Shown in pieces: positions 1 through 52,038 of a stretch of DNA of 64,000 bases. The notes under the pieces are model-generated. The model ran no database searches. It was not told where the DNA came from and worked only from the letters and a program-made list of their open reading frames with translations. Numbering within the stretch: the first letter of the stretch is position 1; each line of letters opens with the position of its first letter. The stretch spans positions 248,001 to 312,000 of the forward strand of contig NIVC01001184.1 of the NCBI GenBank assembly GCA_002269645.1, given 5' to 3'. A program made the position numbers and the translations under genes. This DNA comes from Macrostomum lignano. Its lineage: Eukaryota.

Positions 1-495
1 GAATCTAGGGACTCAAAGAAATAATATGCAGAATTCAGGGACTCAAAGACACAATATGTGGAATTCAGGGAGTCAAAGAAACAATATTGAGAATCCAGGG
101 ACTTAAAGAAACAATATGTGGAATCCAGGGACTTAAAGAAACAATATGGAGACTCCAGGGACTTAAATCCTGGGACTCAAAGAAACAATATGGGGAATCC
201 AGGGACTCAAAGATACAATATTGGGAATTTAGGGACTCAAAGACAATATTGGGAATCCAGGGACTCAAAGACACACTAAGGGAAAATCAGGGACTCAAAG
301 ACACACTATGGGAAATTTAGGGACTCAACGAAACAACATGAGGAATTCAGGGACTCAAAGACACAATATGTGGAATCCAAGGACTCAAAGACACAATATG
401 TGGAATTCAGGGACTCAAAGACACAATATGAGGAATCCAAGGACTCAACGACACAATATGTGGAATCCAGGGACACAAAGATACAATATGGGAAA
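1..495. repeat. ~30-bp minisatellite (GAATCCAGGGACTCAAAGACACAATATGTG), ~16 copies, inside the intron of the minus-strand gene
   Basis: Unit visibly repeated with substitutions; short ORFs here are repeat artefacts. Confidence 0.9.
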
Positions 496-575
496 ATCGG
501 AGACGAATTCTCTGAGAATCCAACAACCCTGAGATTTTCAGCAGCATCCATAAACGCAATAAATTAGTCACTCAC

Positions 576-8037: not shown

Positions 8038-8855
<818 letters not shown>

Positions 8856-9381
8856 TGACTTTAGAAATATGGCCATAAAATATAACAGTTGGTCACCGAA
8901 AATACCGCACAGAAGTACAAAACAAGTTATGTTGCCTGCCGCTTGCTTGTGGAAGCAATTTCGAATGTAATGCAGCATTGAATTGAAAATGAATTCAGTG
9001 ATAGACAGCTCTTTGATCTGCACTCTTTGGACTTTGAACGAAGATTCACTCTTTGTGAGCACGACTGAGTACTCAGGTTGTCAAATCGCTCAATGCGCCA
9101 TCGTGAGCGACAGTAGTGCAGCAATGTCAGAGGGGTAAGCAATTGTTTCTTAGAAAGCTGCTGAATCGATTTCTTGACGACAGGCTTGCCAGTTTATTGA
9201 CGTTTACAGTCTGCAAGTGAATGCAAGGCACGCTGGTATTGATCACCATAGGTACCAGGCTGAAACATTTAACTGTCTACTTAGTTGCGAGTATCTATAG
9301 ACCATTGAAGCGCTGCAGATAATGCATTGTAGAGAAAGGACAAATGCAATTTCTGTCTCAACCTGCCTGTCTGTGTCTGTC

Positions 9382-9639
<258 letters not shown>

Positions 9640-10266
9640 TTCTGTTTACTCTCCCAGCTAGAGCAGTCTACAGCGGCTCCTGATAGGCCAGCCCAACACT
9701 GAGCAATCGGCCCTGCTAATCAGCAATTAATAATCCAATTGTAAGCTTCTGACTACAAACTATGCTGCTATGCTCATAGAGACTGCAGGAAGGGGAAGTG
9801 CAGCGAGAGCCGCAGGCCACTCCCAGCAACGGGAGCGGCCCACCCAGCGTCCCAGTAACTACTGGCCTATAAGCTGCAGCCTTGGCCACCCCATCAAGCG
9901 TCCCCATTGCCGAACTAAATAAATTATATCCCACAGCACCCGTCCCGCACTCCCAATGCCAAGCCTATAGGGAGCTTCTCTCTCAGCATCATCGACTGGG
10001 CCACCAAATTCCATTCTATTCTCCTCTCTCTCACTCTCCCAGTCTAGCCCCAGCCACCTGCTCCCCTATTGTTCTTCACTCACCGTCCATCTATTTAAAA
10101 ACACCAGTTTTGTCGCACAAGCATACAAATTGTATTGTAAGCATCTTAGCGCTTTTATACAGGCACCGGTCCGTACTATAGGAGTCCTATACTACACTTT
10201 TAGTCTTTTCTTTTTAAGATTAGCACTTTTATAATATAATCGTAATTCTTAGAAAGTCAGTTTAAA

Positions 10267-34352: not shown

Positions 34353-34739
34353 CCGAGACTATCAGTAGCTTGTTAAAACATAGATTTTCCTGACTATTTT
34401 TTTGGCGTGGACCTTGATTGTTGCTAATTGATTCTTGAACGACGATTTGCCTTTCAGTTTTAATTGGAAAATACTGTCTCACTGTTTGATCAACGCTTTA
34501 AATTGCTTTATTTATGTGCCAATAAATAAATATTCGACTATTCATGCCAATGAATAGTATTTATTTAATTAATAAATACATATTTTATTTAAATAAACTT
34601 GGTTACTAATTTTAAAAAGTTAGATTTGGCTTACAGCTTTTTTGAGTTTTATTGGCAGCAATTAATTTCACTAGATCCAAATCTAAAGTCTTAGACTTTA
34701 CATCGTACGCCTCATCCCAATCCCTTTATTAAACAATTC

Positions 34740-35145
34740 ACCCAAATCCCTACCTCAAACCCTTCACCAGATCCCTAATTCAACCCTTCGCCCAGATCCG
34801 TACTTCAAAACCTTCACCCAGATCCCTACTTCAAAACCTTCACCCAGATCCCTACTTCAAAACCTTCATCCAGATCCCTACTTCAACCCTTTCACCCAGA
34901 TCCCTACTTCAACCATTTCACCCAGATCCCTACTTCAACACTTTCACCCAGATCCCTACTTCAACCCTTTCACCCAGATCCCTACTTCAACACTTTCACC
35001 CAGATCCCTACTTCAACCCTTTCACCCAGATCCCTACTTCAAAACCTTCACCCAGATCCCTACTTCAACACTTTCACCCAGATCCCTACTTCAAAACCTT
35101 CATCCAGATCCCTACTTCAACCATTTACCCAGATCCCTACTTCAA
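34740..35145. repeat. 26-bp minisatellite (CCCAGATCCCTACTTCAAAACCTTCA)
   Basis: Direct pattern; same family as 41460-42070. Confidence 0.9.
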
Positions 35146-35839: not shown

Positions 35840-36121
35840 ATGTCGGCCCAGTCGCCAGCCTCAATGTCGCTAATGGAACAGGAGCTGAATCAGGCTCAGA
35901 TTCGAGAGATTTTCACCTCGTTCAATCGATCGCATCAGCGCTGCTTCACCGATTGCGTTAACAAATTCGACAGGCGAAGCGTTAGCGATTCGGAGAAGAA
36001 TTGCGTAGCAAACTGCGTGGCCAAGTATATGAATACTACTCAGAGAATTTCTATGCGATTCCAGGAGCACCAGGCCATGATCACGGGCGGCGGGGCTGTT
36101 GCTCAAGGCCAGGGAAAATAG
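35840..36121 (+). CDS. TIMM9: Mitochondrial import small Tim chaperone Tim9, intronless, 93 aa
   Basis: Twin CX3C (RCFTDC, NCVANC) and the KYMNTTQRISMRFQE signature. Confidence 0.93.
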   Translation: MSAQSPASMSLMEQELNQAQIREIFTSFNRSHQRCFTDCVNKFDRRSVSDSEKNCVANCVAKYMNTTQRISMRFQEHQAMITGGGAVAQGQGK

Positions 36122-37009: not shown

Positions 37010-37346
37010 GACTAGAAAAGGCACACTTGAGCACAAGCACAACAAAAATTTCCATCAGAACGTCTTTTGCCTGATTGCTCGCCTCCATGGCTAGAAAAGA
37101 ATAGTTTGATTAACTTGCGAAAGACACTTTGGTATTTTGCTCCATATAAAATTCGGAACCTCAGAAGGTGAAGTTTTGTCTGTATTTTGTGGCGATAACC
37201 AGCCTCCAGTGAAATTTGAGTGCAGAGTCCTGCTTTGATTATCCATGGTCAAAAGTCAGTTGCGTATCTGAGATGAAATTTCATCGACAGCTCCAAAAGT
37301 GGAAAAAAAGTCCAACTTTTAAATATTTGTAATATAAATTCTTCAG

Positions 37347-38522
37347 GAAAGCCAACCGTCTGCTGTAACAGTGGCAGCAACAGCGCCACAGTGCGTCGCA
37401 GCTGAAGCTTCACATTCATCTGAGAGCCAAGTTGAAGTTAACACACTAGTTGAACTAACAGATTGCAATCTTAACTTAGAAGCAAGCCAGGGTCGAAGTC
37501 AGCAAGCTAATAAACAACGATTTAAACAAGCGCGAGCGCCTCCGCCTGCAAAACAACAAGCTGAGGCATGCCAGTCATTGAATTTCCGTAATCCAGTAAC
37601 CGCACGTTATCCAAACACGGATCAGTTGTGGCACAGAGTTGGAGAATTATCCCTATTCGATTGGTCAGTGTCCGGCAACGAGACTTGCATAGTAGTTCGC
37701 GGTCGAGGCTTCTGCATCGCTCTAGACGTTGGCGTCTGCCCGCCGCAGGCTGTGGACGCCGATCACGTGTTTATTAGTCACGGTCACGTTGATCATTGCG
37801 GCGCATTGCACATGCATATTAGAAAGCGTCAGTTGCTTAGACTGCCACCGGCTGTCTACTACATGCCCGAATGTCTAATAAATCCAATGCAATCTACATT
37901 GGCTGCATTTGTTACCATGCAAGGTGACAGCGACTATGCGGAAATGGTGTCCAACTCTAGACTTGTCGGTTTGAAAGTTGGCGATCGAGTTCCAATTAGT
38001 AATGACAATAATCAGCCTGCCGATGCAGCCAGTCTGACCTTGAGCGTATTCGCTACTGATCATCGGGTGCCCAGTTTGGGCTGCATATTGCGCCGTAGAC
38101 ACATCGTTTTGCTGCCTGAATGTCGTCGACTGAGCCAGGATGAGCTGCGAGCACGGGTTGCTCAGGGCCTGCCAGTGCGCGGTCCCGAGTGGGAGCCGTT
38201 GCTAGGCTACACTGGAGACACCAGATTCAATGTATTCTTAACGCCGCAAGATCCGGACTTGTTGCGCGTTAGATTGCTCATTTCCGAGTTGACATTTTTG
38301 AGTGGTTCGATTGAACGCGCAGATAGTTTTGGACATTGTCACGTTGATCAATTTGCGCAGCATTGGAGACTGTTTGGCGCTGTGAATCGGCTTGTGTTTG
38401 TGCACTTTAGCAATAAGGTTTTGCCGGAAGAGATTCTTGAGCGGGTGTACTCAACTTTGCCTCAACAGCTGGGTCGCAGAGTCTACTGCGGACTGATTGC
38501 CAAGAGATTGCTGTATTCATGA
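37347..38522 (+). CDS. tRNase Z short form, TM/plant type (metallo-beta-lactamase fold), copy A; intronless, opens at a splice acceptor
   Basis: WSVSGxETC, ALDVGVCP, SHGHVDH, TDHRVPS, YTGDT, SELT, GHCH and VHFS; TTCTTCAG acceptor at 37346 phase 0 with in-frame TAA at 37335. Confidence 0.88.
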   Translation, partial: ESQPSAVTVAATAPQCVAAEASHSSESQVEVNTLVELTDCNLNLEASQGRSQQANKQRFKQARAPPPAKQQAEACQSLNFRNPVTARYPNTDQLWHRVGELSLFDWSVSGNETCIVVRGRGFCIALDVGVCPPQAVDADHVFISHGHVDHCGALHMHIRKRQLLRLPPAVYYMPECLINPMQSTLAAFVTMQGDSDYAEMVSNSRLVGLKVGDRVPISNDNNQPADAASLTLSVFATDHRVPSLGCILRRRHIVLLPECRRLSQDELRARVAQGLPVRGPEWEPLLGYTGDTRFNVFLTPQDPDLLRVRLLISELTFLSGSIERADSFGHCHVDQFAQHWRLFGAVNRLVFVHFSNKVLPEEILERVYSTLPQQLGRRVYCGLIAKRLLYS

Positions 38523-38821
38523 GCCATGGACTACAAAATGAAAGAGAAACTTTCCAAACAGAGCTTGTTATCCTTAAGTAATTTGCTTGTACACAAGCTT
38601 GGTAACTATATGTGCAATAGACAGACTGATATGTACCGAAACAAATCTGATATAGCTGAATATGAGCAACCATTCTCAACCATCCGATTTATCGTGGCTT
38701 TGAGGCAAGCATAGAAATCGAACACCAAAATGGTGTACACTTCTTCTCTGAGATAAAAAGACTGTATAGGATTGCTCATCTGCAAAATGGCTGCGGTTAA
38801 AAGGGTCCTCAAAAATTGAGA

Positions 38822-38994
38822 ACATGCTTGGGCGCAACCTAGGGATTCGCCCGGCCGTTTCTATTGGCAAAACACACATGTAAGTCGCTATTGGACGGAA
38901 TAGTAGTCACGTGACTGCTCTCAGCCAATAGCGACTTACATGTGTGTGTGTTGCCAATAGAAACGGCCGAGTGATTCCCAAGGTTGCGCATGTA
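38822..38994. mobile_element. ~170-bp palindromic MITE, copy 3 (inverted relative to copy 2)
   Basis: Near-identical to the reverse complement of 32128-32299. Confidence 0.8.
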
Positions 38995-39316
38995 TGAATT
39001 TGAGAAACTACTCGTATATTGGTTGCTGAAGTTTTTAAAATACTTCTACCAGTGAATATTATTGGTTGATGCAGGGAAATCCGCTGCTCACGAATTTAAT
39101 CTCTCATTCAACTGAGAAAAGTAAACTCGGTCGTTTAAGACACAGACAAGTAACTTTATAGCCTCGCAGATAATCTTCACGACCATAGGCAACTTTTGGG
39201 AGGACTCCAGGCTTTGCCATGCTTCAAGGCTTCAAGATTAAGTATTGAAAACAGCACGAAACAAACAATGAAACTTAGTCTATGTTAGAAAGCTCCCTGG
39301 ACTAATACTTTACATA

Positions 39317-39889
39317 CGAGGGTCATCCCAAAAGTTCTCTGTGTCACTGAATTGCTCCTACGAACTGGCACCAATTTTGAAGAAACTGCACACAAACTTG
39401 CACCAATATCTGCACACAACATTGATGAATTTTCATAAAAAAATCTCCATGCAATTAGAAATAACAAGCTGAGTTGTCCAACACCTTCAGAGCAAATGGA
39501 CAGCTCTCACATTGACTTCTTTAACTGGCACAGTGCAGCTCGTGCAGCATCACCGACCAGTCATGCGAGTCAGCCAGTCATTCAAGAATAAATGATGGAA
39601 TTCTTGTCAAGTTCATTCACTTTTCTGCTTGTGACACTTGCCTATTCAGTCGGTGATGCTGCACGAGCTGCACTGTGCCAGTTAAAGAAGTCAATGTGAG
39701 AGCTGTCCATTTGCTCTGAAGGTGTTGGACAACTCAGCTTGTTATTTCTAATTGCATGGAGATTTTTTTATGAAAATTCATCAATGTTGTGTGCAGATAT
39801 TGGTGCAAGTTTGTGTGCAGTTTCTTCAAAATTGGTGCCAGTTCGTAGGAGTGGTTCAGTGATACAGAGAACTTTTGGGATGACCCTCG
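39317..39889. mobile_element. Mariner-derived MITE, 573 bp, 241-bp TIRs
   Basis: TA|CGAGGGTCATCCCAAAAG ... CTTTTGGGATGACCCTCG|TA; arms 39317-39557 and 39649-39889. Confidence 0.9.
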
Positions 39890-40501
39890 TATGGTGGGAA
39901 TAATTAATACTATTTATTAACTTAAAATATGAAAGGAAATGTCCCAAATTTTGAGGATTTTCGACCACAGAGACATTTCGTGGACCGAGCAGTCCATCAC
40001 GTTTCGTTATCTATGCCAGGCTAATTTTGCTCAGTCTGGTTTGGATTTAATTAATTGCTGTATGGACTGCTTGGGGTTGGTTGCCTTTTAACTGAAAAAT
40101 TTATGGTTGTATATGAGTGTGTTCTTAGACGAATAAGACGAAGACGAATAATAAAACAATGCCATGCATTTCAGCGTATTGGCTCTTGTATTTCTTTTGT
40201 TTTTGTTTACGTATTTTAGTTCTTACTAGGTATTTTACTTGTAGTAAAAAATCTTTTGTGTATAGTACTGACTCAGTAGCTAGTGTGGTTCGCTTAATAT
40301 AAAAACTCCCTTAGAATAACAAAATAGCTTCTACCTAGGAATTCCGTGTGACAGTGACAGTAGCTCAAAAAGATATTCTTAGAGATATTTTTGAATCCTG
40401 AATTTCGCACAGCAATTCTGATGCTTAGAAAAACCAGTAGCTCAAAAAGACACTCACGCTACATATCGGCTGGTTTCCCATGATTTTTGTCCCTATTCCA
40501 G

Positions 40502-41374
40502 TGTCTGTCAGTGCCCGATCCCCTCCTGCCCCTGCCGGCATGGATGGCTGGCCTGTTTGCCCTGCTAATCGCTGTTGGCTTTGTGCTCAGCCTGTACCTG
40601 TGGGAGCTCGGCTCGGCCAATGCTCGAGCTGGGGTTGATCGCGACAATCCTAAAGTGATTATTCGCAGGTTTCTCGGCGTCTCAGCGGTTAGTTTAAGCG
40701 TGCTGATCTGCTATAGGTACTTTCTGATGAAGCCGACAGCTGCCAGCTGGTCAGATGTGCTTCAGCTGATCGGTCTGAGATGGTCCGGAATGCTGCCAGC
40801 TGTTGGAGCATCCTTGTTGCTAACCGCTATCCTGTTCACTGGCCCGATTCTGCTAGCCTGGGAGACTGGCGACGGATTCTTTGATAGGGAACCGCTGCTG
40901 AGTTTGAGATGCTGCCGCACTTTAGTGTTGGCTCCGGTCACTGAAGAGCTGTGCTTTCGCGCCCTGATGCTGCCGGTGCTGTGCGTTCATCTCTCTTGCA
41001 CTCGGGCGGCCTTCCTGTCGCCGCTGTTCTTCGGCTTGGCGCATTTTCATCATTTGATTAACCGGCTACAGCGCGGCTATCCGCTTGTGCCCAGCCTGAT
41101 TCAGGCAACGTTTCAATTCTCCTACACTTACATATTCGGCGTGTATTCGGCCTACTTGTATTTGAGAACTGGCCAGTTAGCTGCCGCCTGCGCCGCGCAT
41201 TCCTTCTGCAATCTGATGGGTTTCCCAGATTTTGAGGCGCTGGCCAATCTGCGAGGAATTAAACTGGCGGTGCACGGCGGCGCCTTTGTTTTGGGATTGG
41301 TTGGTTGGCTGGCCCTGCTGGGGCGGCTGACCGAACCAGCGATGTTTGCTTCGCAGTGCGACTGCTTCTGGTAG
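40502..41374 (+). CDS. RCE1: CAAX prenyl protease 2 (Rce1), intronless
   Basis: RDNPKVIIRRF, APVTEELCFR, FFGLAHFHH, FSYTYIFG and HSFCNLMGFP motifs; acceptor TTCCAG at 40501 phase 0; start uncertain (internal Met ~15 codons in). Confidence 0.93.
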   Translation, partial: CLSVPDPLLPLPAWMAGLFALLIAVGFVLSLYLWELGSANARAGVDRDNPKVIIRRFLGVSAVSLSVLICYRYFLMKPTAASWSDVLQLIGLRWSGMLPAVGASLLLTAILFTGPILLAWETGDGFFDREPLLSLRCCRTLVLAPVTEELCFRALMLPVLCVHLSCTRAAFLSPLFFGLAHFHHLINRLQRGYPLVPSLIQATFQFSYTYIFGVYSAYLYLRTGQLAAACAAHSFCNLMGFPDFEALANLRGIKLAVHGGAFVLGLVGWLALLGRLTEPAMFASQCDCFW

Positions 41375-41459
41375 CGAGTTGTTTGATCCATCTATTAACT
41401 GTTGTTGCGAGTTTAATTGCTTTTTATATACATCTAACCCTTCGAAAATCCCTGCAATA

Positions 41460-42070
41460 AACCCCTCACACAGATCCCTACATCAAACCCTTCACAAATC
41501 CCTACATTAAGCCCTTCACACAGATCCCTACATCAAACCCTTCACAAATCCCTACATTAAGCCCTTCACACATATCCCTGCACCAAACCCTTCACAGAGA
41601 TACCTACATTAAACCATTCACAGATCCCTACATTAAACCCCTCACACAGATTCCTACATCTAACCCTTCACACAGATCCCTACATCTAACCCTTCACATG
41701 AATCCTACGTCTAACCCTTCACATAGTTCCCTACATCTAACCACACTGATCCCTACACCTAACCTTCACACAGTTTCCTACATCTAACCTTCACACAGTT
41801 TCCTACACCTAACCTTCACACAGTTTCCTACATCTAACCTTCACACAGTTTCCTACATCTAACCCTTCATATGGATCATACGTCTAATCCTTCACACAGA
41901 TCCCTATATCTATATAACCCTTCACACAGTTCCCTTCATCTAACCCTTCACTTGGATCTTACATCTAACCCTCCACACAGATCCCTGCATATAACCCTTC
42001 ACACATCCCTAAATCTAATTCTTTACACAGATTCCTACATTAAACCCTTCACACATTCCTACATTATTCT
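41460..42070. repeat. Degenerate 25-27-bp C/A-rich minisatellite (CAGATCCCTACATCTAACCCTTCACA)
   Basis: Direct pattern. Confidence 0.85.
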
Positions 42071-42679
42071 TACCCTTCACAAGAGGTCCCTGCACAAAAC
42101 CAGTCAGCCAGTTTAAGCCTAAAATCCCCAACTTCAATAAAATATTTGTGAATCTTCATTTTTGCGTCCTAAAAATGGTGTGGCTTTACTTGTTAGTACT
42201 TTTCAAATATCAGTTTGTTAGTTGTTTCTGCAAGAACATTTGCACTCTTCTATCAGCTAAGGTTTATGTTTACTCTTGTAAGTTTTGTTACATTGTTTGT
42301 ACATGTACGTTAAGCATTGAGAGTTTTCTACTCAACGAATCAGTCAATCAATCGATATTTATTCAAATTTGCTGAAAAAGTTAAACTGAATTTAATCTGT
42401 TGGCAGTCACTTTTCCTGATTTTTAATTCATACTTTTGTAAGTTTTTATTTTCAATTTCTCATTTATGCGACTTTGGTTATTATTCCTAACAGTGTGGCA
42501 AAGAGATTACTTTTTTCAATAAATGTATTACGGACGGCATTACTGGCTACTTTCCTACTTGACAAGCTGGTTTAACTTACTTAATTATATTTAGTTTTAC
42601 CAGACTTATTCTTATTTTCCTGATTGCGCCAGGCGCTTAAACCATTGTTGTAGGAATGTAAAGGTAGTTATTTGTTTAT

Positions 42680-43548
42680 TAGATTTTAAGGCCGTTGCAG
42701 TAATCAGGGATTGTAGCGGGGTTGCAGTGTTGCAGTAATCAGGGATTGTGTCGGGGTTGCAGTGTTGCAGTAATCAGAGATTGTGGCGGGGTTGCAGTGT
42801 TGCAGTAATCAGGGATTGTGTCGGGGTTGCAGTGTTGCAGTAATCAGGGATTGTAGCGGGGTTGCAGTGTTGAAGTAATCAGGGATTGTGTCGGGGTTGC
42901 AGTGTTGCAGTAATCAGGGATTGTGTCAGGGTTGCAGTGTTGCAGTAATCAGGGATTGTGTCGGGGTTGGAGTGTTGCAATAATCAGGGATTGTGTCGGG
43001 GTTGCAGTGTTGCAGTAATCAAGGATTGTGTCGGGGTTGCAGTGTTGCAGTAATCAGGGATTGTGTCGGGGTTGCAGTGTTGCAGTAATCAGGGATTGTG
43101 TTGGGGTTGCAGTGTTGCAGTAATCAGGGATTGTAGCGGGGTTGCAGTGTTGCAGTAATCAGGGATTGTGTCGGGGTTGCAGTGTTGCAGTAATCAGGGA
43201 TTGTGTCGGGGTTGCAGTGTTGCAGTAATCAGGGATTGTGTTGGGGTTGCAGTGTTGCAGTAATCAGGGATTGTAGCGGGGTTGCAGTGTTGCAGTAATC
43301 AGGGATTGTAGCGGGGTTGCAGTGTTGCAGTATTCAGGGATAGTGTCGGGGTTGCAGTGTTGCAGTAATCAGGGATAGTGTCGGGGTTGCAGTGTTGCAG
43401 TAATCAGGGATTGTGTCGGGGTTGCAGTGTTGCAGTAATCAGGGATTGTGTCGGGGTTGCAGTGTTGCAGTAATCAGGGATTGTAGCGGGGTTGCAGTGT
43501 TGCAGTAATCAGGGATTGTGTCGGGGTTGCAGTGTTGCAGTAATCAGG
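42680..43548. repeat. 35-bp minisatellite (GTTGCAGTAATCAGGGATTGTGTCGGGGTTGCAGT), ~25 copies
   Basis: Direct pattern. Confidence 0.96.
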
Positions 43549-43727
43549 GCAATTAATACACGTGCCGTTAATGGTATTTAGCTCATTGCATTATAATATA
43601 TGAACTGAGTGTTTTAAAAAGAAGAAAATTCGTTGGAATTCATGTACCATTGCGTAAGAATAAAGGCAGAAAATACAAAAACAGGTTTTGGCTGTCCTGA
43701 GCAGCTAGTTCAAGCCGAGGTGACACA

Positions 43728-44756
43728 ATGTCCCATAATGACGAAGGTGCAGAGACCGCCAAAGCGGCCAGTTGGGTCGAGTTTTTCGCCGACCAACCGC
43801 AGAACAAGATGCGAGTGTTCGACTGGTCAGTGTCCGGCTTTGAGACTTGCATAGTAGTCCACGGTCCCAGCTTCCGTCTGGCGCTGGACATTGGCGCCTG
43901 TCCGCCGCAGGCAATCAGCGCCGATCACGTGTTCATTAGTCACGGTCACGTGGACCATTGCGGAGCACTGCACCAGCACATGCGCCGGCGTCAACTGGTA
44001 GGCCTACCACCAGCTACGTACTACGTGCCGGAGCATCTGGTCCAGCCGCTGATTGACATTGCTCGGCTATTCAGCGTCGTACATGGCGACGAAGACGAGG
44101 ACAACGAAGGAGGTTCTGCGAAACTGTCGACGAAAGATAAAAAATCCAAGAAAGAGGATGCCACTGTCGCAGACGGTGCCTCAGCCGAAGCTGGGAGTGA
44201 CGAAATAAGAATCTACGGCAAAATTGTAGCCGCTAGTCCGGGTGACGATTTGCAACTGTCAAAGAATCTTCGCATCCGTCCGTTCGCCACAGATCATCGA
44301 GTACCCAGCATTGGCTGTCTGGTGTACTGCAAGCGCAGCCAGTTGCTACCCAAATATGCCGGCCTGCCGGGTGCGGAACTTGCCGAACTGGCTCGCAACG
44401 GGGAACAGTTACGAGAGGCTCGGTGGGAACCCGCTATCGGCTACACAGGGGATACCAGATTCACTGTTCTAGCGTGTCCTCCCGAGCCCGACCTGCTCAA
44501 GGTTAGACTGTTAGTCTGCGAGCTAACCTACGTTGAAGGGCCGACAGATACAGCTGAGAAATACGGTCATTGTCATTTGCACGATTTCTCGTCGCGTGCA
44601 AATCTGTTTGACAATGTTGGCCAGCTGTTGTTTGTGCACTTCAGTAGGCGGCACTCGCCTAACCAAGTGATTAACGCTGTGCTGACTTCGCTGCCAGAGG
44701 AGCTACGGTCTAAAGTCTACTGCGGACTCAATGCTCTGCGGTTCTATCGTTCCTGA
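43728..44756 (+). CDS. tRNase Z short form, TM/plant type, copy B, 342 aa, intronless
   Basis: Own ATG; WSVSGFETC, LDIGACP, SHGHVDH, TDHRVPS, short arm KRSQLLPKYAGLPGAELAEL, YTGDT, CELT, YGHCH and VHFS. Confidence 0.9.
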   Translation: MSHNDEGAETAKAASWVEFFADQPQNKMRVFDWSVSGFETCIVVHGPSFRLALDIGACPPQAISADHVFISHGHVDHCGALHQHMRRRQLVGLPPATYYVPEHLVQPLIDIARLFSVVHGDEDEDNEGGSAKLSTKDKKSKKEDATVADGASAEAGSDEIRIYGKIVAASPGDDLQLSKNLRIRPFATDHRVPSIGCLVYCKRSQLLPKYAGLPGAELAELARNGEQLREARWEPAIGYTGDTRFTVLACPPEPDLLKVRLLVCELTYVEGPTDTAEKYGHCHLHDFSSRANLFDNVGQLLFVHFSRRHSPNQVINAVLTSLPEELRSKVYCGLNALRFYRS

Positions 44757-44987
44757 TGATACTGACTTATTTTACTATTCTATCTTACACTAAATAAAGT
44801 TTATACTGATGCTTTGCCATTGTTTTCTCAGACAGTTTTTTTAATAAAAAGTTTTAAACATCGTGTCTTTAATTAATTTAACTTTCTATTTTACAAAATA
44901 AACTGTAAAAATTTCAGCTAGAATTTCACTGCCGTAACTACAAAACTGAGCTGATTTCGATTCGGAGCTGCACTCCAAACATTAATT

Positions 44988-45047
44988 ATGACTGCTGAGG
45001 TTAAACATGCTGCGGGGCTGGACAGCCGGCAGCCTGCTATGAAAGAG
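44988..45047 (+). CDS. CCS: Copper chaperone for SOD1, exon 1
   Basis: ATG 44988, donor GAG|GTGGGT 45048, phase 0. Confidence 0.75.
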
Positions 45048-45069
45048 GTGGGTTTGGCACTTTCTGTAG

Positions 45070-45713
45070 GAGTGGCCTGTTGTGTGCCTTGTCTGTCTGC
45101 CCTGTCCTATTCTGTCTGTGTGTTCTGTCTGCCCTGTCCTGTTCTGTCTGCGTGTTCTGCCTGTCCTATTCTGTCTGTCTGTTCTGTCTGCCCTGTCCTG
45201 TTCTGTCTGTGTGTTCTGCCTGTCCTGTTCTGTCTGTGTGTTCTGTCTGTCCTGTCCTGTTCTGTCTGTCTGTTCTGTCTGCCCTGTCCTGTTCTGTCTG
45301 TGTGTTCTGTCTGCCCTGTCCTGTTCTGTCTGCGTGTTCTGCCTGTCCTATTCTGTCTGTCTGTTCTGTCTGCCCTGTCCTGTTCTGTCTGTGTGTTCTG
45401 CCTGTCCTGTTCTGTCTGTGTGTTCTGTCTGTCCTGTCCTGTTCTGTCTGTCTGTTCTGTCTGCCCTGTCCTGTTCTGTCTGTCTGTTCTGTCTGTCCTG
45501 TCCTGTTCTGTCTGTGTGTTCTGCCTGTCCTGTTCTGTCTGTGTGTTCTGTCTGCCCTGTCCTGTTCTGTCTGTGTGTTCTGTCTGCCCTGTCCTGTTCT
45601 GTCTGTGTGTTCTGTCTGCCCTGTCCTGTTCTGTCTGTGTTCTGTCTGTCCTGTCCTGTTCTGTCTGTCTCTTCTGTCTGTGTGTTCTGCCTGTCCTGTT
45701 CTGTCTGTCCTGT

Positions 45714-45746
<33 letters not shown>

Positions 45747-45808
45747 GTCTGTTCTGTCTGCCCGGTTCTGTTCTGTTTGTCTGTCTGTCTGTCTCTCTGT
45801 CTGTCTGG

Positions 45809-45862
<54 letters not shown>

Positions 45863-45865
45863 GGT

Positions 45866-45962
<97 letters not shown>

Positions 45963-45993
45963 GGTTGTTTGTCTGTCTGTCTGTCTGTCTGTG

Positions 45994-46026
<33 letters not shown>

Positions 46027-46042
46027 GGTTGTCTGTCTGTCC
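45070..46042. repeat. ~33-bp TCTG-derived minisatellite merging into (TCTG)n, CCS intron 1
   Basis: Direct pattern. Confidence 0.93.
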
Positions 46043-46091
46043 TGCAGACCTGTATGATCCACCTTACTACTCCATTTGCATTCCATCCCAG

Positions 46092-46559
46092 CTGCAATTC
46101 GCTGTCAACATGACCTGTCAATCATGCGCCGACTCGGTCAGTCGAGTTCTATCCAGTCACCAGCCGGCAAGCGACTTCGCGGACATCCGAATTCAACTGA
46201 CTGAACAGCGGGTCATCCTGCGCACTTCGCTGCACGTTGACTCGGTGCTGGAGCTGCTGGAGACCACCGGCTGTCGGGCTTTGCTGCAAGGCGTTGGCAC
46301 AGCCAGCCAGGGCATGCGGGGTCAGGACTTCGCATCTGGCGTCGTACAATTGGAATCAGTTTATACTACTAATACTAGTAGTGTCCAGGGAGTAGTTCGA
46401 ATTTTGCAGCCAGATGATCAGCAGTGCCTGTTCGATGGCACAGTGGACGGTCTGGAGCCCGGCAGTTGGTACAGCCTCGAGGTCCGTCAGGGCGGTGATC
46501 TGTCTGGGGGGTCTGACACATGCGGCCCGGTGTATAATGACGGCTCTGATGATGCACAG
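46092..46559 (+). CDS. CCS: CCS exon 2 (HMA domain plus first half of the SOD-like domain)
   Basis: LQFAVNMTCQSC, VQGVVRILQ, DGTVDGLEPG and GDLS; CAG acceptor 46091, donor CAG|GTGCGT 46560. Confidence 0.93.
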
Positions 46560-46612
46560 GTGCGTTCTGTGTTATATATCCCTGTTTTTGTCTGTCTGCA
46601 TCTTGGGGTGTA

Positions 46613-47092
46613 CGCTCTCTCACCTTACAGCATTCGCTCTCTCACCTTACAGCATCCGCTCTCTCACCTTACAGCATTCGCTCTCTCACCTTACAGCATC
46701 CGCTCTCTCATAAGTTAAGGCATCCGCTCTCATCTTACAGCATCCGCTCTGTCTCCTTACAGCATCCGCTCTGTCACCTTACAGCATCCGCTCCCTCATC
46801 AGTTACAGCATCCTCTCTCTTAGCTTACAGCATCCGCTCCCTCATCAGTTACAGCATCCTCTCTCTTAGATTACAGCATCCGCTCCCTCATCAGTTACAG
46901 CATCCTCTCTTTTAGCTTACAGCATCCGCTCTCTCACCTTACAGCATCCGCTCTCTCACCTTACAGCATCCGCTCCCTCATCAGTTACAGCATCCGCTCC
47001 CTCATCAGTTACAGCATCCGCTCCCTCATCAGTTACAGCATCCGCTCCCTCATCAGTTACAGCATCTGCTTCCTCATCGGTTAGAGCATCCG
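46613..47092. repeat. 22-bp minisatellite (CTCTCTCACCTTACAGCATCCG), CCS intron 2
   Basis: Direct pattern. Confidence 0.92.
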
Positions 47093-48564: not shown

Positions 48565-50012
48565 CCTTCAGTTGGTGTAGCAACCTTTCAGTTGGTGTAG
48601 CAACCTTTCAGTTGGTGTAGCAACCTTTCAGTTGGTGTACCTACCCTTCAATTGGTGTAGCTACCCTTCAGTTGGTGTAGCTACCCTTCAGTTGGTGTAG
48701 CTACCCTTCAGTTGGTGTAGCAACCCTTTAGTTGGTGTAGCAACCCTTCAGTTGGTGTAGCTACCCTTCAGTTGGTGTAGCTACCCTTCAGTTGGTGTAC
48801 CTACCCTTCAGTTGGTGTAGCAACCTTTCAGTTGGTGTAGCTACCTTTCAGTTGGTGTAGCAACCCTTCAGTTGGTGTAGCAACCCTTCAGTTGGTGTAG
48901 CTACCCTTCAGTTGGTGTACCTACCCTTCAGTTGGTGTACCTACCCTTCAGTTGGTGTACCTACCCTTCAGTTGGTGTAGCAACACTTCAGTTGGTGTAG
49001 CTACCCTTCAGTTGGTGTAGCTACCCTTCAGTTGGTGTAGCTACCCTTCAGTTGGTGTAGCTACCCTTCAGTTGGTGTAGCAACCCTTCAGTTGGTGTAG
49101 CTACCCTTCAGTTGGTGTAGCTACCCTTCAGTTGGTGTACCTACCCTTCAGTTGGTGTACCTACCCTTCAGTTGGTGTACCTACCCTTCAGTTGGTGTAC
49201 CTACCCTTCAGTTGGTGTACCTACCCTTCAGTTGGTGTAGCAACACTTCAGTTGGTGTAGCTACCCTTCAGTTAGTGTACCTACCCTTCAGTTGGTGTAG
49301 CTACCCTTCAGTTGGTGTAGCTACCCTTCAGTTGGTGTAGCTACCCTTCAGTTGGTGTAGCTACCCTTCAGTTGGTGTAGCTACCCTTCAGTTGGTGTAG
49401 CTACCCTTCAGTTGGTGTAGCTACCCTTCAGTTGGTGTAGCTACTCTTCAGTTGGTGTAGCTACCCTTCAGTTGGTGTAGCTACCCTTCAGTTGGTGTAG
49501 CTACCCTTCAGTTGGTGTAGCTACCTTTCAGTTGGTGTAGCTACCCTTCAGTTGGTGTAGCTACCCTTCAGTTGGTGTAGCTACCCTTCAGTTGGTGTAG
49601 CTACCCTTCAGTTGGTGTAGCTACCCTTCAGTTGGTGTAGCTACTCTTCAGTTGGTGTAGCTACCCTTCAGTTGGTGTAGCTACCCTTCAGTTGGTGTAG
49701 CTACCCTTCAGTTGGTGTAGCTACCCTTCAGTTGGTGTAGCTACCCTTCAGTTGGTGTAGCTACTCTTCAGTTGGTGTAGCTACCCTTCAGTTGGTGTAG
49801 CAACCCTTCAGTTGGTGTAGCTACCCTTCAGTTGGTGTAGCTACCCTTCAGTTGGTGTAGCTACTCTTCAGTTGGTGTAGCTACTCTTCAGTTGGTGTAG
49901 CTACCCTTCAGTTGGTGTAGCTACCTTTCAGTTGGTGTAGCAACCCTTCAGTTGGTGTACCTACCCTTCAGTTAGTGTACCTACCCTTCCGTTGGTGTAA
50001 GCAACCCTTCAG
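48565..50012. repeat. 20-bp minisatellite (GTTGGTGTAGCTACCCTTCA), ~70 copies
   Basis: Direct pattern. Confidence 0.97.
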
Positions 50013-50249
50013 TTTTTCCACTACCCAGTCTACTCTGTACCCTAATCTTCTGCGTTCTACTTGTTCTCCTGCGCATAAATCTATGGCATAAATAAAAGCC
50101 AATTGAAGTGAAAAAATTGACGCCTGCATTTATAGCATTTTGTCTCGCTTCTTATTGGGACACTTTAAAACAATTAATGCAAATTTTTATTACAATGTTC
50201 GTATCATACTACTTTTTCGTTAGTTATTTTTTCAATCAATCCTTCCCAG

Positions 50250-50549
50250 TCTGACGATCCCTCCGGACTGGTCGGTCGAGTTCACACTGGGCCGAGTGGG
50301 CGGCTTCGATTCAGCTTGATTTCGAATCGACTTCGCTTATGGAATCTTGTGGGCCGCTGCCTCACAGTGAGCAAGTCTGCCGGTTGCAGCGAGAACGTCT
50401 GCGCCGCAGGCATTGTGGCGCGATCTGCAGGGCTATTCGCCAACGACAAACGAATCTGCTCCTGCGATGGCGTTGAAATTTGGAGCGAACGCGACGTGCC
50501 ATCGGTTGGGGCTGGTAGAGCCGCTGCTGCGGCCGCTTTGAAAAAGTGA
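50250..50549 (+). CDS. CCS: CCS exon 3 (end of SOD-like domain plus CXC domain III); 275 aa spliced
   Basis: CCTTCCCAG acceptor 50249 phase 0; AAGIVARSAGLFANDKRICSCDGVEIWSER. Confidence 0.93.
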   Translation, partial: SDDPSGLVGRVHTGPSGRLRFSLISNRLRLWNLVGRCLTVSKSAGCSENVCAAGIVARSAGLFANDKRICSCDGVEIWSERDVPSVGAGRAAAAAALKK

Positions 50550-50824
50550 ATGCATTCAGTCTGACGATATGTATCGAAATAATATTTTTATTGCACTTTA
50601 AAAATTTATGAGCTTTGCTCTGCAGGAAACTTGAGTACGAGTCATTATTTTACAAGCGTACAAATTAGATCTTATGTAGCCGATATGTATCGGAAATTGT
50701 CTAGTTACTTAAAATCGTTATCAGAATTGATTTAACTTGCAGCCTAATTTTATACGAGCTATGCCACCATTTGGAGTCGGATTTGGAATTTTTTTTATCT
50801 CAATGGTCAGGGAAAGAAAACAGA

Positions 50825-52038
50825 GCATTACTGCGGGCCAGAGGAGGGGAGAAAGGAGATAGAGGAATAAGAGGAGAGGAGATGAAAGATAAAATAGGAG
50901 AGAAGGAAAGGGAGAGCTGATGGAGAAGATGAGAGAGAGTAGAGAAGAGAGAGGAGTGGAGAGGAGAGAAGGGAAGGGAGAGGAGAGAAGGGAAGGGAGA
51001 GGAGAGGAGGGAAGGGAGAGAAGAGGAGGGTAGGGAAGGGAGAGGAGAGAAGGGAAGGGAGAGGAGAGGAGGGAAGGGAGGGAAGGGAGAGGAGAGGAGA
51101 GAGGGAAGGGAGAGGAGAGGAGAGAAGGGAAGGGAGAGGAGAGGAGAGAAGGGAAGGGAGAGGAGAGGAGGGAAGGGAGAGGAGAGGAGAGGAGAGGAGA
51201 GAAGGGAAGGGAGAGGAGGGAAGGGAGAGGAGAGGAGAGAAGGGAAGGGAGAGGAGAGGAGAGAAGGGAAGGGAGAGGAGAGGAGGGAAGGGAGAGGAGA
51301 GGAGAGGAGAGGAGGGAAGGTAATGGAGAGGAGAGGAGAGAAGGGAATGGAGAGGAGAGGAGAGAAGGGAAGGGAGAGGAGAGGAGAGAAGGGAAGGGAG
51401 AGGAGAGGAGGGAAGGGAGAGGAGAGGAGAGGAGAGAAGGGAATGGAGAGGAGAGGAGAGAAGGGAAGGGAGAGGAGAGGAGAGAAGGGAGAGGAGAGGA
51501 GGGAAGGGAGAGGAGAGAAGGGAATGGAGAGTAGAGGAGAGAAGGGAAGGGAGAGGAGAGGAGAGAAGGGAAGGGAGAGGAGAGGAGAGGAGGGAAGCGA
51601 GAGAAGAGGAGGGAAGGTAATGGAGAGGAGAGGAGAGAAGAGGAGAGGAGAGAAGGGAGAGGAGAGGAGGGAAGGGAGAGGAGAGAAGGGAATGGAGAGG
51701 AGAGGAGAGAAGGGAAGGGAGAGGAGAGGAGGGAAGGTAATGGAGAGGAGAGGAGGGAAGGGAGAGGAGAGGAGAGGAGGGAAGGGAGAGGAGAGAAGGG
51801 AATGGAGAGGAGAGAAGGGAAGGAAGAGGAGAGGAGGGAAGGAAGAGGAGAGGAGAGAAGGGAAGGGAGAGAAAAGGAGAGGAGAGGAGGAGTGGAGAGA
51901 AGGGAAGGGGAGACGAAAGGAGACTAGAGAAGGGAGCTAGAAGAGACGTTCACCTTGAGCGGGCCGGATTGCTATTGTGAATTTTAAAATTAAAACCCGG
52001 ATACAGAGGCTCTGCGGGCCGAAGTTTGCGGACCCCTG
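50825..52038 (+). mobile_element. Polypurine-core hAT MITE copy with the core expanded to ~1.1 kb; 5' TIR lost
   Basis: ACTGCGGGCCAGAGG 5' part, GGAGA/GGGAA repeats, CCTTGAGCGGGCCGGATTGCTATTGTG and 3' TIR GTTTGCGGACCCCTG. Confidence 0.75.

What the first reader, a model, noticed from the sequence alone, without database searches (positions are those of the whole stretch)
37347..44756. Two intact Thermotoga/plant-type short tRNase Z genes in an animal
Seen: both proteins have WSVSGxETC (in place of EGxSxGG), LD(I/V)GxCP, HGHVDH, a short basic flexible arm without the GP motif (KRSQLLPKYAGLPGAELAEL, close to plant TRZ1 KLKKEYIGLSGNEIKNL as recalled), xELT instead of HEAT, and GHCH instead of HST. 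All metal ligands appear conserved. Known: animals typically have ELAC2 (long form) and a bacterial-type ELAC1, while the TM type is characteristic of Thermotoga and plants. Inference: a lineage-retained or horizontally acquired third tRNase Z class, duplicated in tandem (long stretches of nucleotide identity remain). It may have a different substrate, such as CCA-containing ends or other small RNAs.
Basis: partly seen in the sequence, partly recalled or inferred. Interest (0 to 1): 0.8.

Follow-up and report, generated by a model that had tools for sequence, protein, structure and literature searches.

The report
Plant-type short tRNase Z pair, flatworm
The flatworm Macrostomum lignano carries two intact copies of a short tRNA-end-processing enzyme of the plant/Thermotoga type, but the same gene turns out to be inherited by many invertebrate animals, so it is an overlooked ordinary family rather than a one-off oddity.

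Summary
The window is Macrostomum lignano. It has two intronless ORFs on the + strand, g1 (37347-38522) and g2 (43728-44756).

By sequence and by predicted fold they are closest to rice RNase ZS1/TMS5. Next comes Thermotoga maritima tRNase Z, and human ELAC1 is far behind. An ELAC1 profile does not hit them at all.

Orthologues occur in molluscs, hemichordates, nemerteans, an annelid, a brachiopod, a tardigrade, and cestode and trematode flatworms. Public databases already auto-name many of them "tRNase Z TRZ1" or "nuclear ribonuclease Z-like".

Three intron positions, identical in alignment column and phase, are shared by a hemichordate, a chiton, a cestode and a trematode. The gene is therefore vertically inherited from at least the bilaterian ancestor, not recently acquired by horizontal transfer.

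The two Macrostomum copies are an old lineage-specific duplication:
- They share 44% amino-acid identity.
- Nucleotide similarity is only 77% over 215 bp, so there are no long identical stretches.
- An unrelated Rce1-like gene lies between them.

g1 has no ATG of its own and probably takes it from the spliced leader.

The literature I could search does not describe this animal clade. The 2012 metazoan survey did not report it.

Interest is modest.

The parts
37339..37346 (+). Putative 3' splice / spliced-leader acceptor (ttcttcag|G) directly upstream of g1
   Evidence: Sequence read. The exon would start at 37347, which is in frame with the ORF (37347 + 24 = 37371). An in-frame TAA lies at 37335-37337. 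The M. lignano spliced leader ends in ATG (PMC8629364). The same sequence is present in the second assembly. SL use is inferred, not shown.
37347..38522 (+). g1: intronless gene for a TM/plant-type short tRNase Z paralogue (391 codons from the acceptor; about 97-aa acidic N-terminal extension)
   Evidence: ORF. Motifs: loop 37662-37688, motif II HGHVDH 37779-37796, motif III 38052-38069, divergent arm 38091-38186, motif IV 38208-38228, SELT 38283-38294, GHCH 38331-38342, motif V 38400-38411. It is 99.7% identical to the copy in NIVC01000206.1, while flanking DNA is 92-95% identical.
43728..44756 (+). g2: intronless gene for a TM/plant-type short tRNase Z paralogue (342 aa, own ATG)
   Evidence: ORF. 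Motifs: loop 43824-43850, motif I 43881-43895, motif II 43941-43958, motif III 44286-44303, motif IV 44442-44462, CELT 44517-44528, GHCH 44565-44576, motif V 44634-44645. AlphaFold2 model has mean pLDDT 89. The best structural match is rice RNase ZS1, TM-score 0.88. AATAAA signals lie at 44793, 44843 and 44897.
44328..44420 (+). g2 flexible arm (CKRSQLLPKYAGLPGAELAELARNGEQLREA): short TM-type arm, no GP motif
   Evidence: It aligns with the plant KL motif KLKxxYxxLxGxxIxxLK, with Y, L, G, L and L conserved (motif definition from PMC3161902). It is modelled with pLDDT 96-98 as a strand extension plus helix 215-223.
44088..44207 (+). g2-specific charged low-complexity insert (about residues 121-160), predicted disordered
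   Evidence: pLDDT below 50 for residues 129-158. The insert is absent from g1 and from all orthologues in the alignment.

Best explanation
g1 and g2 are two functional, anciently duplicated, intronless paralogues. They encode a short-form tRNase Z of the Thermotoga/plant (TRZ1/TRZ2, rice RNase ZS1/TMS5) type.

Shown:
- Each has a metallo-beta-lactamase fold with the full two-metal site: HxHxDH, the motif III and V histidines, and the motif I and IV aspartates.
- Each has the Glu/His proton-relay pair in the xExT and HxH variants.
- g2 has a short TM-type flexible arm without a GP motif. The arm in g1 is divergent.
- Neither has the PxKxRN/PxPxRG loop or the AxDx motif.
- They belong to an orthologous family present in many invertebrate phyla. 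That family shares an ancestral exon structure, so it was inherited vertically from at least the bilaterian ancestor. It is separate from ELAC1 and ELAC2.
- All ancestral introns are absent from both Macrostomum copies, and both copies are under purifying selection.

Inferred:
- The introns were lost (processed copy or intron loss) before the duplication.
- g1 gets its initiator ATG from the spliced leader.
- By homology with rice TMS5 and plant TRZ1, the enzymes act on tRNA 3' ends in the cytosol or nucleus. They would either remove 3' trailers or remove the 2',3'-cyclic phosphate from CCA-less tRNAs so that CCA can be re-added. Their N-termini are acidic and do not look like mitochondrial presequences.
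For: Identity:
- Single-sequence search of PDB sequences: rice RNase ZS1 2.2e-43, T. maritima 0.022, ELAC1 not listed at E <= 1.
- Profile search: rice ZS1 1.7e-73 over the full length, T. maritima 5.6e-20, ELAC1 2.8e-11 in fragments, E. coli and B. subtilis RNase Z about 1e-3.
- Foldseek on a pLDDT-89 model: 7xgt E = 1.5e-26 with TM 0.88; T. maritima 2e7y 5.7e-15 with TM 0.74; ELAC1 at rank 22.
- The motif-by-motif alignment shows all TM-type hallmarks and no ELAC1 hallmarks.
- An ELAC1 profile gives no hit at E <= 10. Profiles of the other animals score 287 and 244 bits.

Distribution:
- Named orthologues occur in Mollusca, Hemichordata, Nemertea, Annelida, Brachiopoda, Tardigrada, Cestoda and Trematoda.

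Vertical descent:
- Introns fall at FIS|HGH (phase 2), alignment column 564 (phase 0) and TG|DT (phase 1). They are at the identical column and phase in Glandiceps, Liolophura, Spirometra and Calicophoron.
- A fourth intron is shared by the two neodermatan flatworms.
- None of the six introns of the plant Cuscuta coincides with them.

Paralogy:
- g1 and g2 are sister at 93% bootstrap and 44% identical.

Constraint:
- Between two diverged copies of the locus, g1 differs at 4 codons (2 synonymous, 2 non-synonymous).
- g2 differs at 12 codons (8 synonymous, 4 conservative non-synonymous).
- Intergenic DNA is only 92-95% identical and has indels.

Function of the closest characterised relative:
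- TMS5 removes the 2',3'-cyclic phosphate from cP-deltaCCA-tRNAs made by Vms1 during ribosome-associated quality control (PMC11831146; PMC11897441).

g1 start:
- The spliced leader ends in ATG (PMC8629364).
- An in-frame acceptor lies at 37346/37347.
Against: - No expression, trans-splicing or activity data were available here.
- g1 lacks its own ATG, and no AATAAA or ATTAAA lies within 600 nt of its stop. Its arm also departs from the KL consensus (Y to C, G to Q).
- Deep nodes of the NJ tree are unresolved (6-46% bootstrap). The Macrostomum pair sits weakly (21%) next to a stramenopile-like group rather than with the other flatworms. That group's profile scores nearly as high as the animal one (271 against 287 bits for g2).
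- Because the Macrostomum copies have no introns, the shared-intron argument does not apply to them directly.
- Plant members also cleave mRNAs (titles and abstracts), so the substrate is uncertain.
Confidence: 0.8

Rival explanations
1. The proteins are diverged ELAC1 (bacterial-type short tRNase Z) orthologues, that is, the ordinary animal short form.
For: Both are short MBL-fold tRNase Z relatives. ELAC1 is detectable with a family profile at 2.8e-11.
Against: - An ELAC1 profile built from five animals, including Schistosoma, gives no hit.
- The PxPxRG loop, the long GP arm, and the HEAT, HST and AxDx motifs are all absent.
- Rice ZS1 and T. maritima outrank ELAC1 by 60 and 9 orders of magnitude in the profile search.
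- ELAC1 is rank 22 by fold.
- ELAC1 forms a separate group in the NJ tree, where it was used to root.
- Saccoglossus has both types (PMC3433465 Fig S2).
Confidence: 0.01
2. The genes are a recent horizontal acquisition by Macrostomum from a bacterium, alga or plant, or assembly contamination.
For: - Both copies are intronless.
- The type was thought characteristic of plants and Thermotoga (PMC3161902).
- The NJ tree does not group them with the other flatworms.
- A stramenopile-like profile scores almost as well as the animal one.
Against: - The genes sit between animal genes (Tim10, Rce1-like, a CCS-like gene) in two independent, diverged copies of the locus, on a 675-kb contig.
- Their closest hits by score are animals.
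- The C-terminal signature (R/K)(R/K)VYC(G/S)L.AK(K/R) is shared with cestodes.
- The family is demonstrably old in animals (shared introns) and present in other flatworms.
- The paralogues are 44% identical, so the duplication itself is ancient.
- The neighbouring Tim10 and Rce1-like genes are also single ORFs here.
Confidence: 0.06
3. The enzymes are not tRNA 3'-end nucleases. They would be MBL phosphodiesterases for another substrate, such as cyclic nucleotides (like Apyc1) or specific mRNAs.
For: - Apyc1 is the next PDB family after the tRNase Zs (7u2r: 1.7e-5 with the profile; Foldseek rank 5).
- Orthologues carry weak PF23023 Apyc1 hits.
- All parasitic-flatworm orthologues have lost the tRNA-binding arm, so the family tolerates loss of canonical tRNA binding.
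- Rice ZS1 and ZS2 are reported to cut mRNAs.
Against: - g2 keeps an arm that matches the plant KL motif and is modelled confidently.
- Pfam finds no Apyc1 hit on g1 or g2 themselves.
- The match to rice ZS1 covers the full length at TM 0.88, against 0.60 for Apyc1.
- TMS5 has a demonstrated tRNA cyclic-phosphatase role.
Confidence: 0.15
4. g1 is a decaying pseudogene and only g2 is functional.
For: - There is no in-frame ATG before codon 156.
- There is no canonical poly(A) signal within 600 nt downstream.
- The arm is divergent.
- The Pfam score is below the gathering threshold, although this is also true of g2.
Against: - The 1.15-kb ORF is open in both diverged copies of the locus.
- g1 shows 4 codon changes, against 5-8% divergence and indels in the flanks.
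- All catalytic residues are intact.
- A polypyrimidine-AG acceptor lies exactly in frame, and the spliced leader supplies ATG.
Confidence: 0.08

Closest known systems
Plant TM-type short tRNase Z: rice RNase ZS1/TMS5 (PDB 7xgt), Arabidopsis TRZ1/TRZ2
   Same: - Full-length homology: 1.7e-73 with the profile, about 29% identity, TM-score 0.88.
- The same motif set: a Gly-rich loop in place of PxKxRN, a KL-type short arm, xExT, HxH and no AxDx (definitions in PMC3161902).
   Different: - Animal host.
- The loop is xWSVSG rather than EGxSxxG.
- The KL motif has lost its lysines.
- g2 has a 40-aa disordered insert and g1 has a 97-aa N-terminal extension.
- Intron positions are not shared with the plant gene examined.
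- Function in animals is untested.
Thermotoga maritima tRNase Z (PDB 1ww1/2e7y), the founding TM-type enzyme
   Same: - A short arm without GP and no PxKxRN loop.
- It is the second-best match by sequence (5.6e-20) and by fold (TM 0.74).
   Different: - It is much more distant than the plant enzymes.
- T. maritima keeps His in HECT and has NHA instead of HxH.
- The nearest bacterial relatives of the window proteins among those sampled are Acidobacteriota, Planctomycetota and SAR324 proteins, not Thermotoga.
Animal ELAC1 (bacterial-type short tRNase Z, PDB 3zwf)
   Same: - The same superfamily, a similar size and the same metal ligands.
- Possibly an analogous cellular job. My own recollection, not verified here, is that human ELAC1 also repairs cP-deltaCCA tRNAs in ribosome-associated quality control.
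   Different: - ELAC1 has the PxPxRG loop, a long GP arm, and the HEAT, HST and AxDx motifs, all absent here.
- It forms a separate group in the NJ tree, where it was used to root.
- Its profile does not detect g1 or g2.
Orthologues in other animals, e.g. 'tRNase Z TRZ1' of Lingula anatina, 'nuclear ribonuclease Z-like' of Saccoglossus and Octopus, 'ribonuclease Z chloroplastic' of Clonorchis
   Same: - 32-43% identity over the full length and the same motifs.
- Together with the window proteins they form the animal branch of the family.
   Different: - They have 3-4 introns at conserved positions, whereas the Macrostomum genes have none.
- They were found as a single hit per species in these searches, whereas Macrostomum has two divergent paralogues.
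- Neodermatan flatworm orthologues lack the arm.
- Several mollusc and nemertean orthologues have basic, presequence-like N-termini.

Membership tests
TM-type (Thermotoga/plant TRZ1-TRZ2) short tRNase Z | Metallo-beta-lactamase fold with motifs I-V (Asp, HxHxDH, His, Asp, His) | tested here: met
   D54, H72, H74, D76, H77, H190, D242 and H304 are invariant in 38 sequences. The AlphaFold2 model has pLDDT 89, and all top matches are tRNase Z or other MBL-fold proteins.
TM-type (Thermotoga/plant TRZ1-TRZ2) short tRNase Z | Short TM-type flexible arm: no GP motif, KL motif KLKxxYxxLxGxxIxxLK (PMC3161902) | tested here: met
   g2 reads QLLPKYAGLPGAELAELA and keeps Y6, L9, G11, L14 and L17. g1 reads VLLPECRRLSQDELRARV and is more divergent. 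Neither has a GP motif, and both arms match plant, Acidobacteriota and T. maritima arms in length.
TM-type (Thermotoga/plant TRZ1-TRZ2) short tRNase Z | No PxKxRN (CCA anti-determinant) loop; a Gly-rich substitute upstream of motif I | tested here: met
   DWSVSG(F/N)ETC aligns with plant EGISIGGQETC. No PxKxRN or PxPxRG is present.
TM-type (Thermotoga/plant TRZ1-TRZ2) short tRNase Z | xExT in place of HEAT, and HxH in place of HST | tested here: met
   CELT/SELT and GHCH are present. E265 and H281 are invariant and H283 is nearly invariant.
TM-type (Thermotoga/plant TRZ1-TRZ2) short tRNase Z | No C-terminal AxDx motif (PMC3433465) | tested here: met
   The C-termini KVYCGLNALRFYRS and RVYCGLIAKRLLYS have no AxDx. 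ELAC1 sequences in the same alignment do have it.
TM-type (Thermotoga/plant TRZ1-TRZ2) short tRNase Z | Closer to established members than to any other family | tested here: met
   Rice ZS1 1.7e-73 and T. maritima 5.6e-20, against ELAC1 2.8e-11 and Apyc1 1.7e-5. The order is the same by fold.
TM-type (Thermotoga/plant TRZ1-TRZ2) short tRNase Z | Endonucleolytic or phosphatase activity on tRNA 3' ends | not testable with these tools
   This needs recombinant protein and pre-tRNA or cP-deltaCCA-tRNA substrates.
ELAC1 / bacterial-type short tRNase Z | PxKxRN/PxPxRG loop, long arm with GP motif, HEAT, HST and AxDx | tested here: not met
   All five features are absent in the alignment with human, Schistosoma, Lottia, Nematostella and Saccoglossus ELAC1. 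The ELAC1 HMM gives no hit at E <= 10.
ELAC2 / long tRNase Z | About 800-aa two-domain protein with a pseudo-MBL N-half carrying the arm | tested here: not met
   The proteins have a single MBL domain and are 342 and 391 aa long. ELAC2 chains score only E = 0.2 and cover TMt 0.25-0.30.
Apyc1 anti-Pycsar cyclic-nucleotide phosphodiesterase (PF23023) | Significant match to the Apyc1 family model or structures over the full length | tested here: not met
   Pfam reports no PF23023 hit on g1 or g2 at E <= 0.01. PDB Apyc1 matches only residues about 46-165, at 0.015 for a single sequence and 1.7e-5 for the profile. TMt is 0.60, against 0.88 for rice ZS1.

The most novel reading that the evidence does not exclude
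Bilaterian animals ancestrally had three tRNase Z classes, not two. A plant-TRZ1/TMS5-type short enzyme, with three ancestral introns, survives in Spiralia, hemichordates and tardigrades. It was not reported in the published metazoan survey, which even scored Capitella as lacking any short form. Within flatworms it took two routes. In Macrostomum it became intronless and duplicated into two divergent arm-bearing paralogues. In all parasitic Neodermata sampled it lost the tRNA-binding arm, which suggests a change of substrate there. It may be the tRNA cyclic-phosphate repair enzyme of these animals, alongside or instead of ELAC1.
Probability: 0.5. Interest if true: 0.5.

Novelty: new member of a known kind. 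Interest (0 to 1): 0.35.

Why it matters
Reviews and the only dedicated survey describe animals as having ELAC2 plus, in some lineages, a bacterial-type ELAC1. They treat the Thermotoga/plant type as non-animal.

The data here show that a third, plant-like class is an old and patchily retained animal gene. That corrects the picture of how tRNA 3'-end processing and repair evolved.

It also offers experimentally tractable invertebrates, since RNAi works in Macrostomum. With them one could ask what a CCA-insensitive, TMS5-like enzyme does next to ELAC1 and ELAC2.

The arm-less version in parasitic flatworms could be a lineage-specific enzyme worth characterising.

For the window itself, the result is a clean annotation of two hypothetical proteins.

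Tried and rejected
1. The first profile search used an alignment containing four Acidobacteriota-like sequences. It returned almost only about 282-aa Acidobacteriota 'ribonuclease Z' proteins. This showed a large bacterial sister group but not the eukaryotic distribution. I repeated it with an animal-only profile.
2. The NJ tree separates ELAC1 cleanly and pairs g1 with g2. It does not resolve the order of animals, stramenopile-like sequences, oomycete and plants (6-46% bootstrap), so I could not show animal monophyly by tree. I used intron positions and clade-specific HMM scores instead.
3. I could not test whether M. lignano also has ELAC1 or ELAC2.
4. Rfam found nothing at the gathering thresholds anywhere in the window.
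5. Nucleotide comparison of the flanks of g1 and g2 found no shared duplicated segment beyond a 26-bp minisatellite family. No duplication unit can be drawn.
6. Literature searches for a description of this clade in animals found none: 'TM-type', TRZ1 plus invertebrate, ELAC1 plus Thermotoga plus phylogenetic, and 'ELAC3'. The library lacks most subscription journals, so the absence is not proof.
7. I used rice, wheat and Cuscuta arms instead.

Full report
**What is there**

The region holds two long ORFs on the + strand, at 37371-38522 and 43728-44756. Pfam sees only weak metallo-beta-lactamase (MBL) matches, below the gathering threshold. NCBIfam's best models are all 'ribonuclease Z', far below their equivalog cut-offs.

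The two proteins are 44% identical over 316 residues.
- WSVSGxETC
- ALD(I/V)G
- HGHVDH
- ATDHRV
- YTGDTRF
- (C/S)ELT
- GHCH
- VHFS

The arm string KRSQLLPKYAGLPGAELAEL is in g2.

**Which organism, and is the locus real**

- g2 is 99% identical to 'hypothetical protein BOX15_Mlig003964g5' of Macrostomum lignano.
- The public contig NIVC01000206.1 (675 kb) has the same gene order: Tim10, MBL gene, Rce1-like CAAX protease, MBL gene, then a gene with a weak Sod_Cu match.
- The window is a diverged second copy of that locus, allelic or homeologous. Intergenic DNA is 92-95% identical with many indels. g1 differs at 4 codons (2 synonymous, 2 non-synonymous). g2 differs at 12 codons (8 synonymous, 4 conservative non-synonymous). 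Both ORFs are open in both copies.

Both genes are therefore genuine flatworm genes under purifying selection. They are not contamination.

- Nucleotide similarity between g1 and g2 is one 215-bp block at 77% identity. The longest shared exact word is 17 nt. There are no 'long stretches of nucleotide identity', and the duplication is old.
- The copies are separated by 5.2 kb that contains an unrelated Rce1-like gene at 40487-41374.
- g1 has no in-frame ATG until codon 156, past the HGHVDH motif.
- Immediately upstream of g1 is a polypyrimidine-AG acceptor (ttcttcag|G, 37339-37346). The exon would start at 37347, in frame with the ORF. The M. lignano spliced leader, CGGTCTCTTACTGCGAAGACTCAATTTATTGCATG, ends in ATG and is added to about 30% of genes (PMC8629364). 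I infer, without proof, that g1 is SL trans-spliced and takes its start codon from the leader.

**Family assignment**

| Comparison | Rice RNase ZS1 (7xgt) | T. maritima tRNase Z | Human ELAC1 | Others |
|---|---|---|---|---|
| g2 alone against PDB sequences | 2.2e-43 | 0.022 | not listed at E <= 1 | |
| Profile of animal homologues | 1.7e-73, full length | 5.6e-20 | 2.8e-11, three fragments | Apyc1 1.7e-5; E. coli and B. subtilis RNase Z about 1e-3; ELAC2 0.2 |
| Foldseek on the g2 model | E 1.5e-26, TM 0.88, rmsd 2.1 Å | E 5.7e-15, TM 0.74 | rank 22 | Apyc1, Bacillus/E. coli RNase Z and other MBL-fold proteins in between |

The g2 model is an AlphaFold2 prediction with mean pLDDT 89 and pTM 0.86.

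Fan et al. (PMC3161902) and Wang et al. (PMC3433465) define the TM type by five features:
- a short arm without GP, carrying the KL motif
- no PxKxRN loop
- xExT instead of HEAT
- HxH instead of HST
- no AxDx

All five are met in an alignment that also contains five ELAC1 sequences taken from Wang et al., Fig. S2. An HMM of those ELAC1 sequences does not detect g1 or g2 at E <= 10. The proteins are plant-TRZ1-like TM-type enzymes, not ELAC1.

T. maritima itself is a distant member. The nearest bacterial relatives among those sampled are Acidobacteriota, Planctomycetota and SAR324 proteins.

**Distribution, the main correction**

An exhaustive search of 1.84 billion representative proteins found 1,681 relatives. 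After the Macrostomum paralogues, the best-scoring named ones are animal proteins: a tardigrade, a scallop, an acorn worm and an octopus. They rank ahead of wheat TRZ1 and an oomycete protein.

An animal-only profile search and cluster look-ups add the following:

| Phylum or group | Genera found |
|---|---|
| Mollusca | Octopus (two species), Bulinus, Ylistrum, Mizuhopecten, Liolophura, Nucella, Pomacea, Haliotis, Potamilus, Patella |
| Hemichordata | Glandiceps, Ptychodera, Saccoglossus |
| Nemertea | Lineus, Tubulanus |
| Annelida | Capitella |
| Brachiopoda | Lingula |
| Tardigrada | Paramacrobiotus |
| Cestoda | Spirometra, Schistocephalus, Dibothriocephalus, Echinococcus, Hydatigera, Taenia |
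| Trematoda | Calicophoron, Opisthorchis, Clonorchis |

Many of these carry automatic names such as 'tRNase Z TRZ1', 'nuclear ribonuclease Z-like' or 'ribonuclease Z chloroplastic'.

No vertebrate, arthropod, nematode, echinoderm or cnidarian appeared among the named hits. Absence from those groups was not tested.

The dedicated metazoan survey reported only bacterial-type short forms, and stated that Capitella has no short form (PMC3433465). Neither it nor any other paper I could search describes this clade.

**Vertical or horizontal**

I reconstructed exact exon chains for five genes and mapped the introns onto the protein alignment.
- The hemichordate Glandiceps, the chiton Liolophura, the cestode Spirometra and the trematode Calicophoron share three introns at the identical column and phase: FIS|HGH in phase 2, column 564 in phase 0, and TG|DT in phase 1.
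- The two neodermatan flatworms share a fourth intron.
- The plant Cuscuta has six introns, none at these positions.

Shared introns across deuterostomes and protostomes mean the gene was in the bilaterian ancestor.

The Macrostomum copies have no introns, so this argument reaches them only indirectly. The evidence for their animal origin is:
- Their best hits are animals.
- The profile of other animals scores highest: 287 and 244 bits, against 271 and 235 for a stramenopile-like group and 161 and 124 for plants.
- They share the C-terminal signature (R/K)(R/K)VYC(G/S)L.AK(K/R) with cestodes.

In the NJ tree, g1 and g2 are sister at 93% bootstrap. Deeper nodes are unresolved. Both copies lack all ancestral introns. 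The simplest history is therefore intron loss, or replacement by a processed copy, followed by duplication and long divergence.

**How it probably works**

The two-metal site and the Glu/His relay are intact. The arm of g2 is confidently modelled. The proteins should therefore be active phosphodiesterases that can bind tRNA.

The closest characterised relative is rice RNase ZS1/TMS5. [quoted passage not shown] Plant TM-type enzymes also remove pre-tRNA trailers and lack the CCA anti-determinant loop (PMC3161902).

I therefore propose, by homology only, a cytosolic or nuclear role in tRNA 3'-end trimming or repair. The N-termini of g1 and g2 are acidic and unlike mitochondrial presequences. Several mollusc and nemertean orthologues, by contrast, have basic, acid-poor N-terminal extensions.

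The main functional rival is another substrate, such as mRNA or cyclic nucleotides as for the related Apyc1 enzymes. I give that about 15%.

**Verdict**

The classification as TM/plant-type, and 'lineage-retained', are supported. 'Recently duplicated' and the implied rarity are not.

This is a new, well-supported member pair of a known enzyme class. It belongs to an animal-wide orthologous group that databases already label but that the literature I could search has not described.

Interest is modest at 0.35. The broader point, a third ancestral tRNase Z class in animals with arm loss in parasitic flatworms, is the part worth following up.

Noticed in passing
Orthologues outside the window: P0004, P0323, P0325-P0329 (cestodes and the trematode Calicophoron); locus L002 9202-9322: All seven neodermatan (parasitic flatworm) orthologues in the alignment lack the whole flexible arm, a deletion of about 35-40 aa. 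In Spirometra the deletion lies inside one continuous exon, so it is not a gene-model error. Echinococcus and Taenia have also lost the second His of HxH (GHSR/GHSC). This suggests loss of canonical tRNA binding in parasites.
   Followed up: partly
Orthologues P0147, P0310, P0149, P0305, P0312, P0317, P0324: Several mollusc orthologues (scallops, octopuses, Nucella, Haliotis) and the nemertean Lineus have 50-170-aa N-terminal extensions. These are rich in Arg/Lys and almost free of Asp/Glu in the first 40 residues, like mitochondrial presequences. Hemichordate, tardigrade and flatworm proteins do not. Only charge counts were made.
   Followed up: partly
window 42694-43549: A 35-bp minisatellite (24.5 copies, 95% matches) ends about 180 bp upstream of the g2 start codon. 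It differs in register and copy structure from the other assembly.
   Followed up: no
window 34737-35145 and 41448-42066: The same 26-bp minisatellite family (about 73-77% identity between the arrays) occurs upstream of Tim10 and just downstream of the Rce1-like gene. It is the only similarity between the flanks of g1 and g2.
   Followed up: no
window 44988-46718: The 576-aa 'ORF' here is mostly an artefact of a (TGTC)n-derived repeat at 45090-46044 that reads as CLSV repeats in several frames. Its C-terminal part (LQFAVNMTCQSCADSV...) is read continuously with the tRNase Z sequence in public M. lignano gene models, one of them named HMA domain-containing (P0002, P0308). The gene called next downstream in the other assembly has a weak Sod_Cu match, which suggests a copper-chaperone-for-SOD-like gene.
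   Followed up: partly
window 35840-36121 and 40487-41374: The neighbouring genes on the same strand are a Tim10/DDP zinc-finger protein (93 aa) and an Rce1-like CAAX protease. Both are single ORFs here. The Rce1-like ORF, like g1, has no ATG at its listed start (TTG). No AATAAA or ATTAAA lies within 600 nt after Tim10 or g1. The genes may be processed from a longer SL-resolved transcript; this was not tested.
   Followed up: no
UniProt models P0002, P0040, P0308 (M. lignano): Public gene models fuse the g2-type tRNase Z with the downstream CCS-like gene. The products are 597-683 aa and are named 'CST complex subunit CTC1', 'Lactamase_B domain-containing' and 'HMA domain-containing'. These look like annotation errors.
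   Followed up: no
window 1-2000, 8001-10000, 50001-52000: Base composition swings strongly along the window. GC ranges from 0.27 to 0.58, and GC skew reaches +0.61 at 50-52 kb. Abundant satellite repeats are a likely cause, but these regions were not examined.
   Followed up: no
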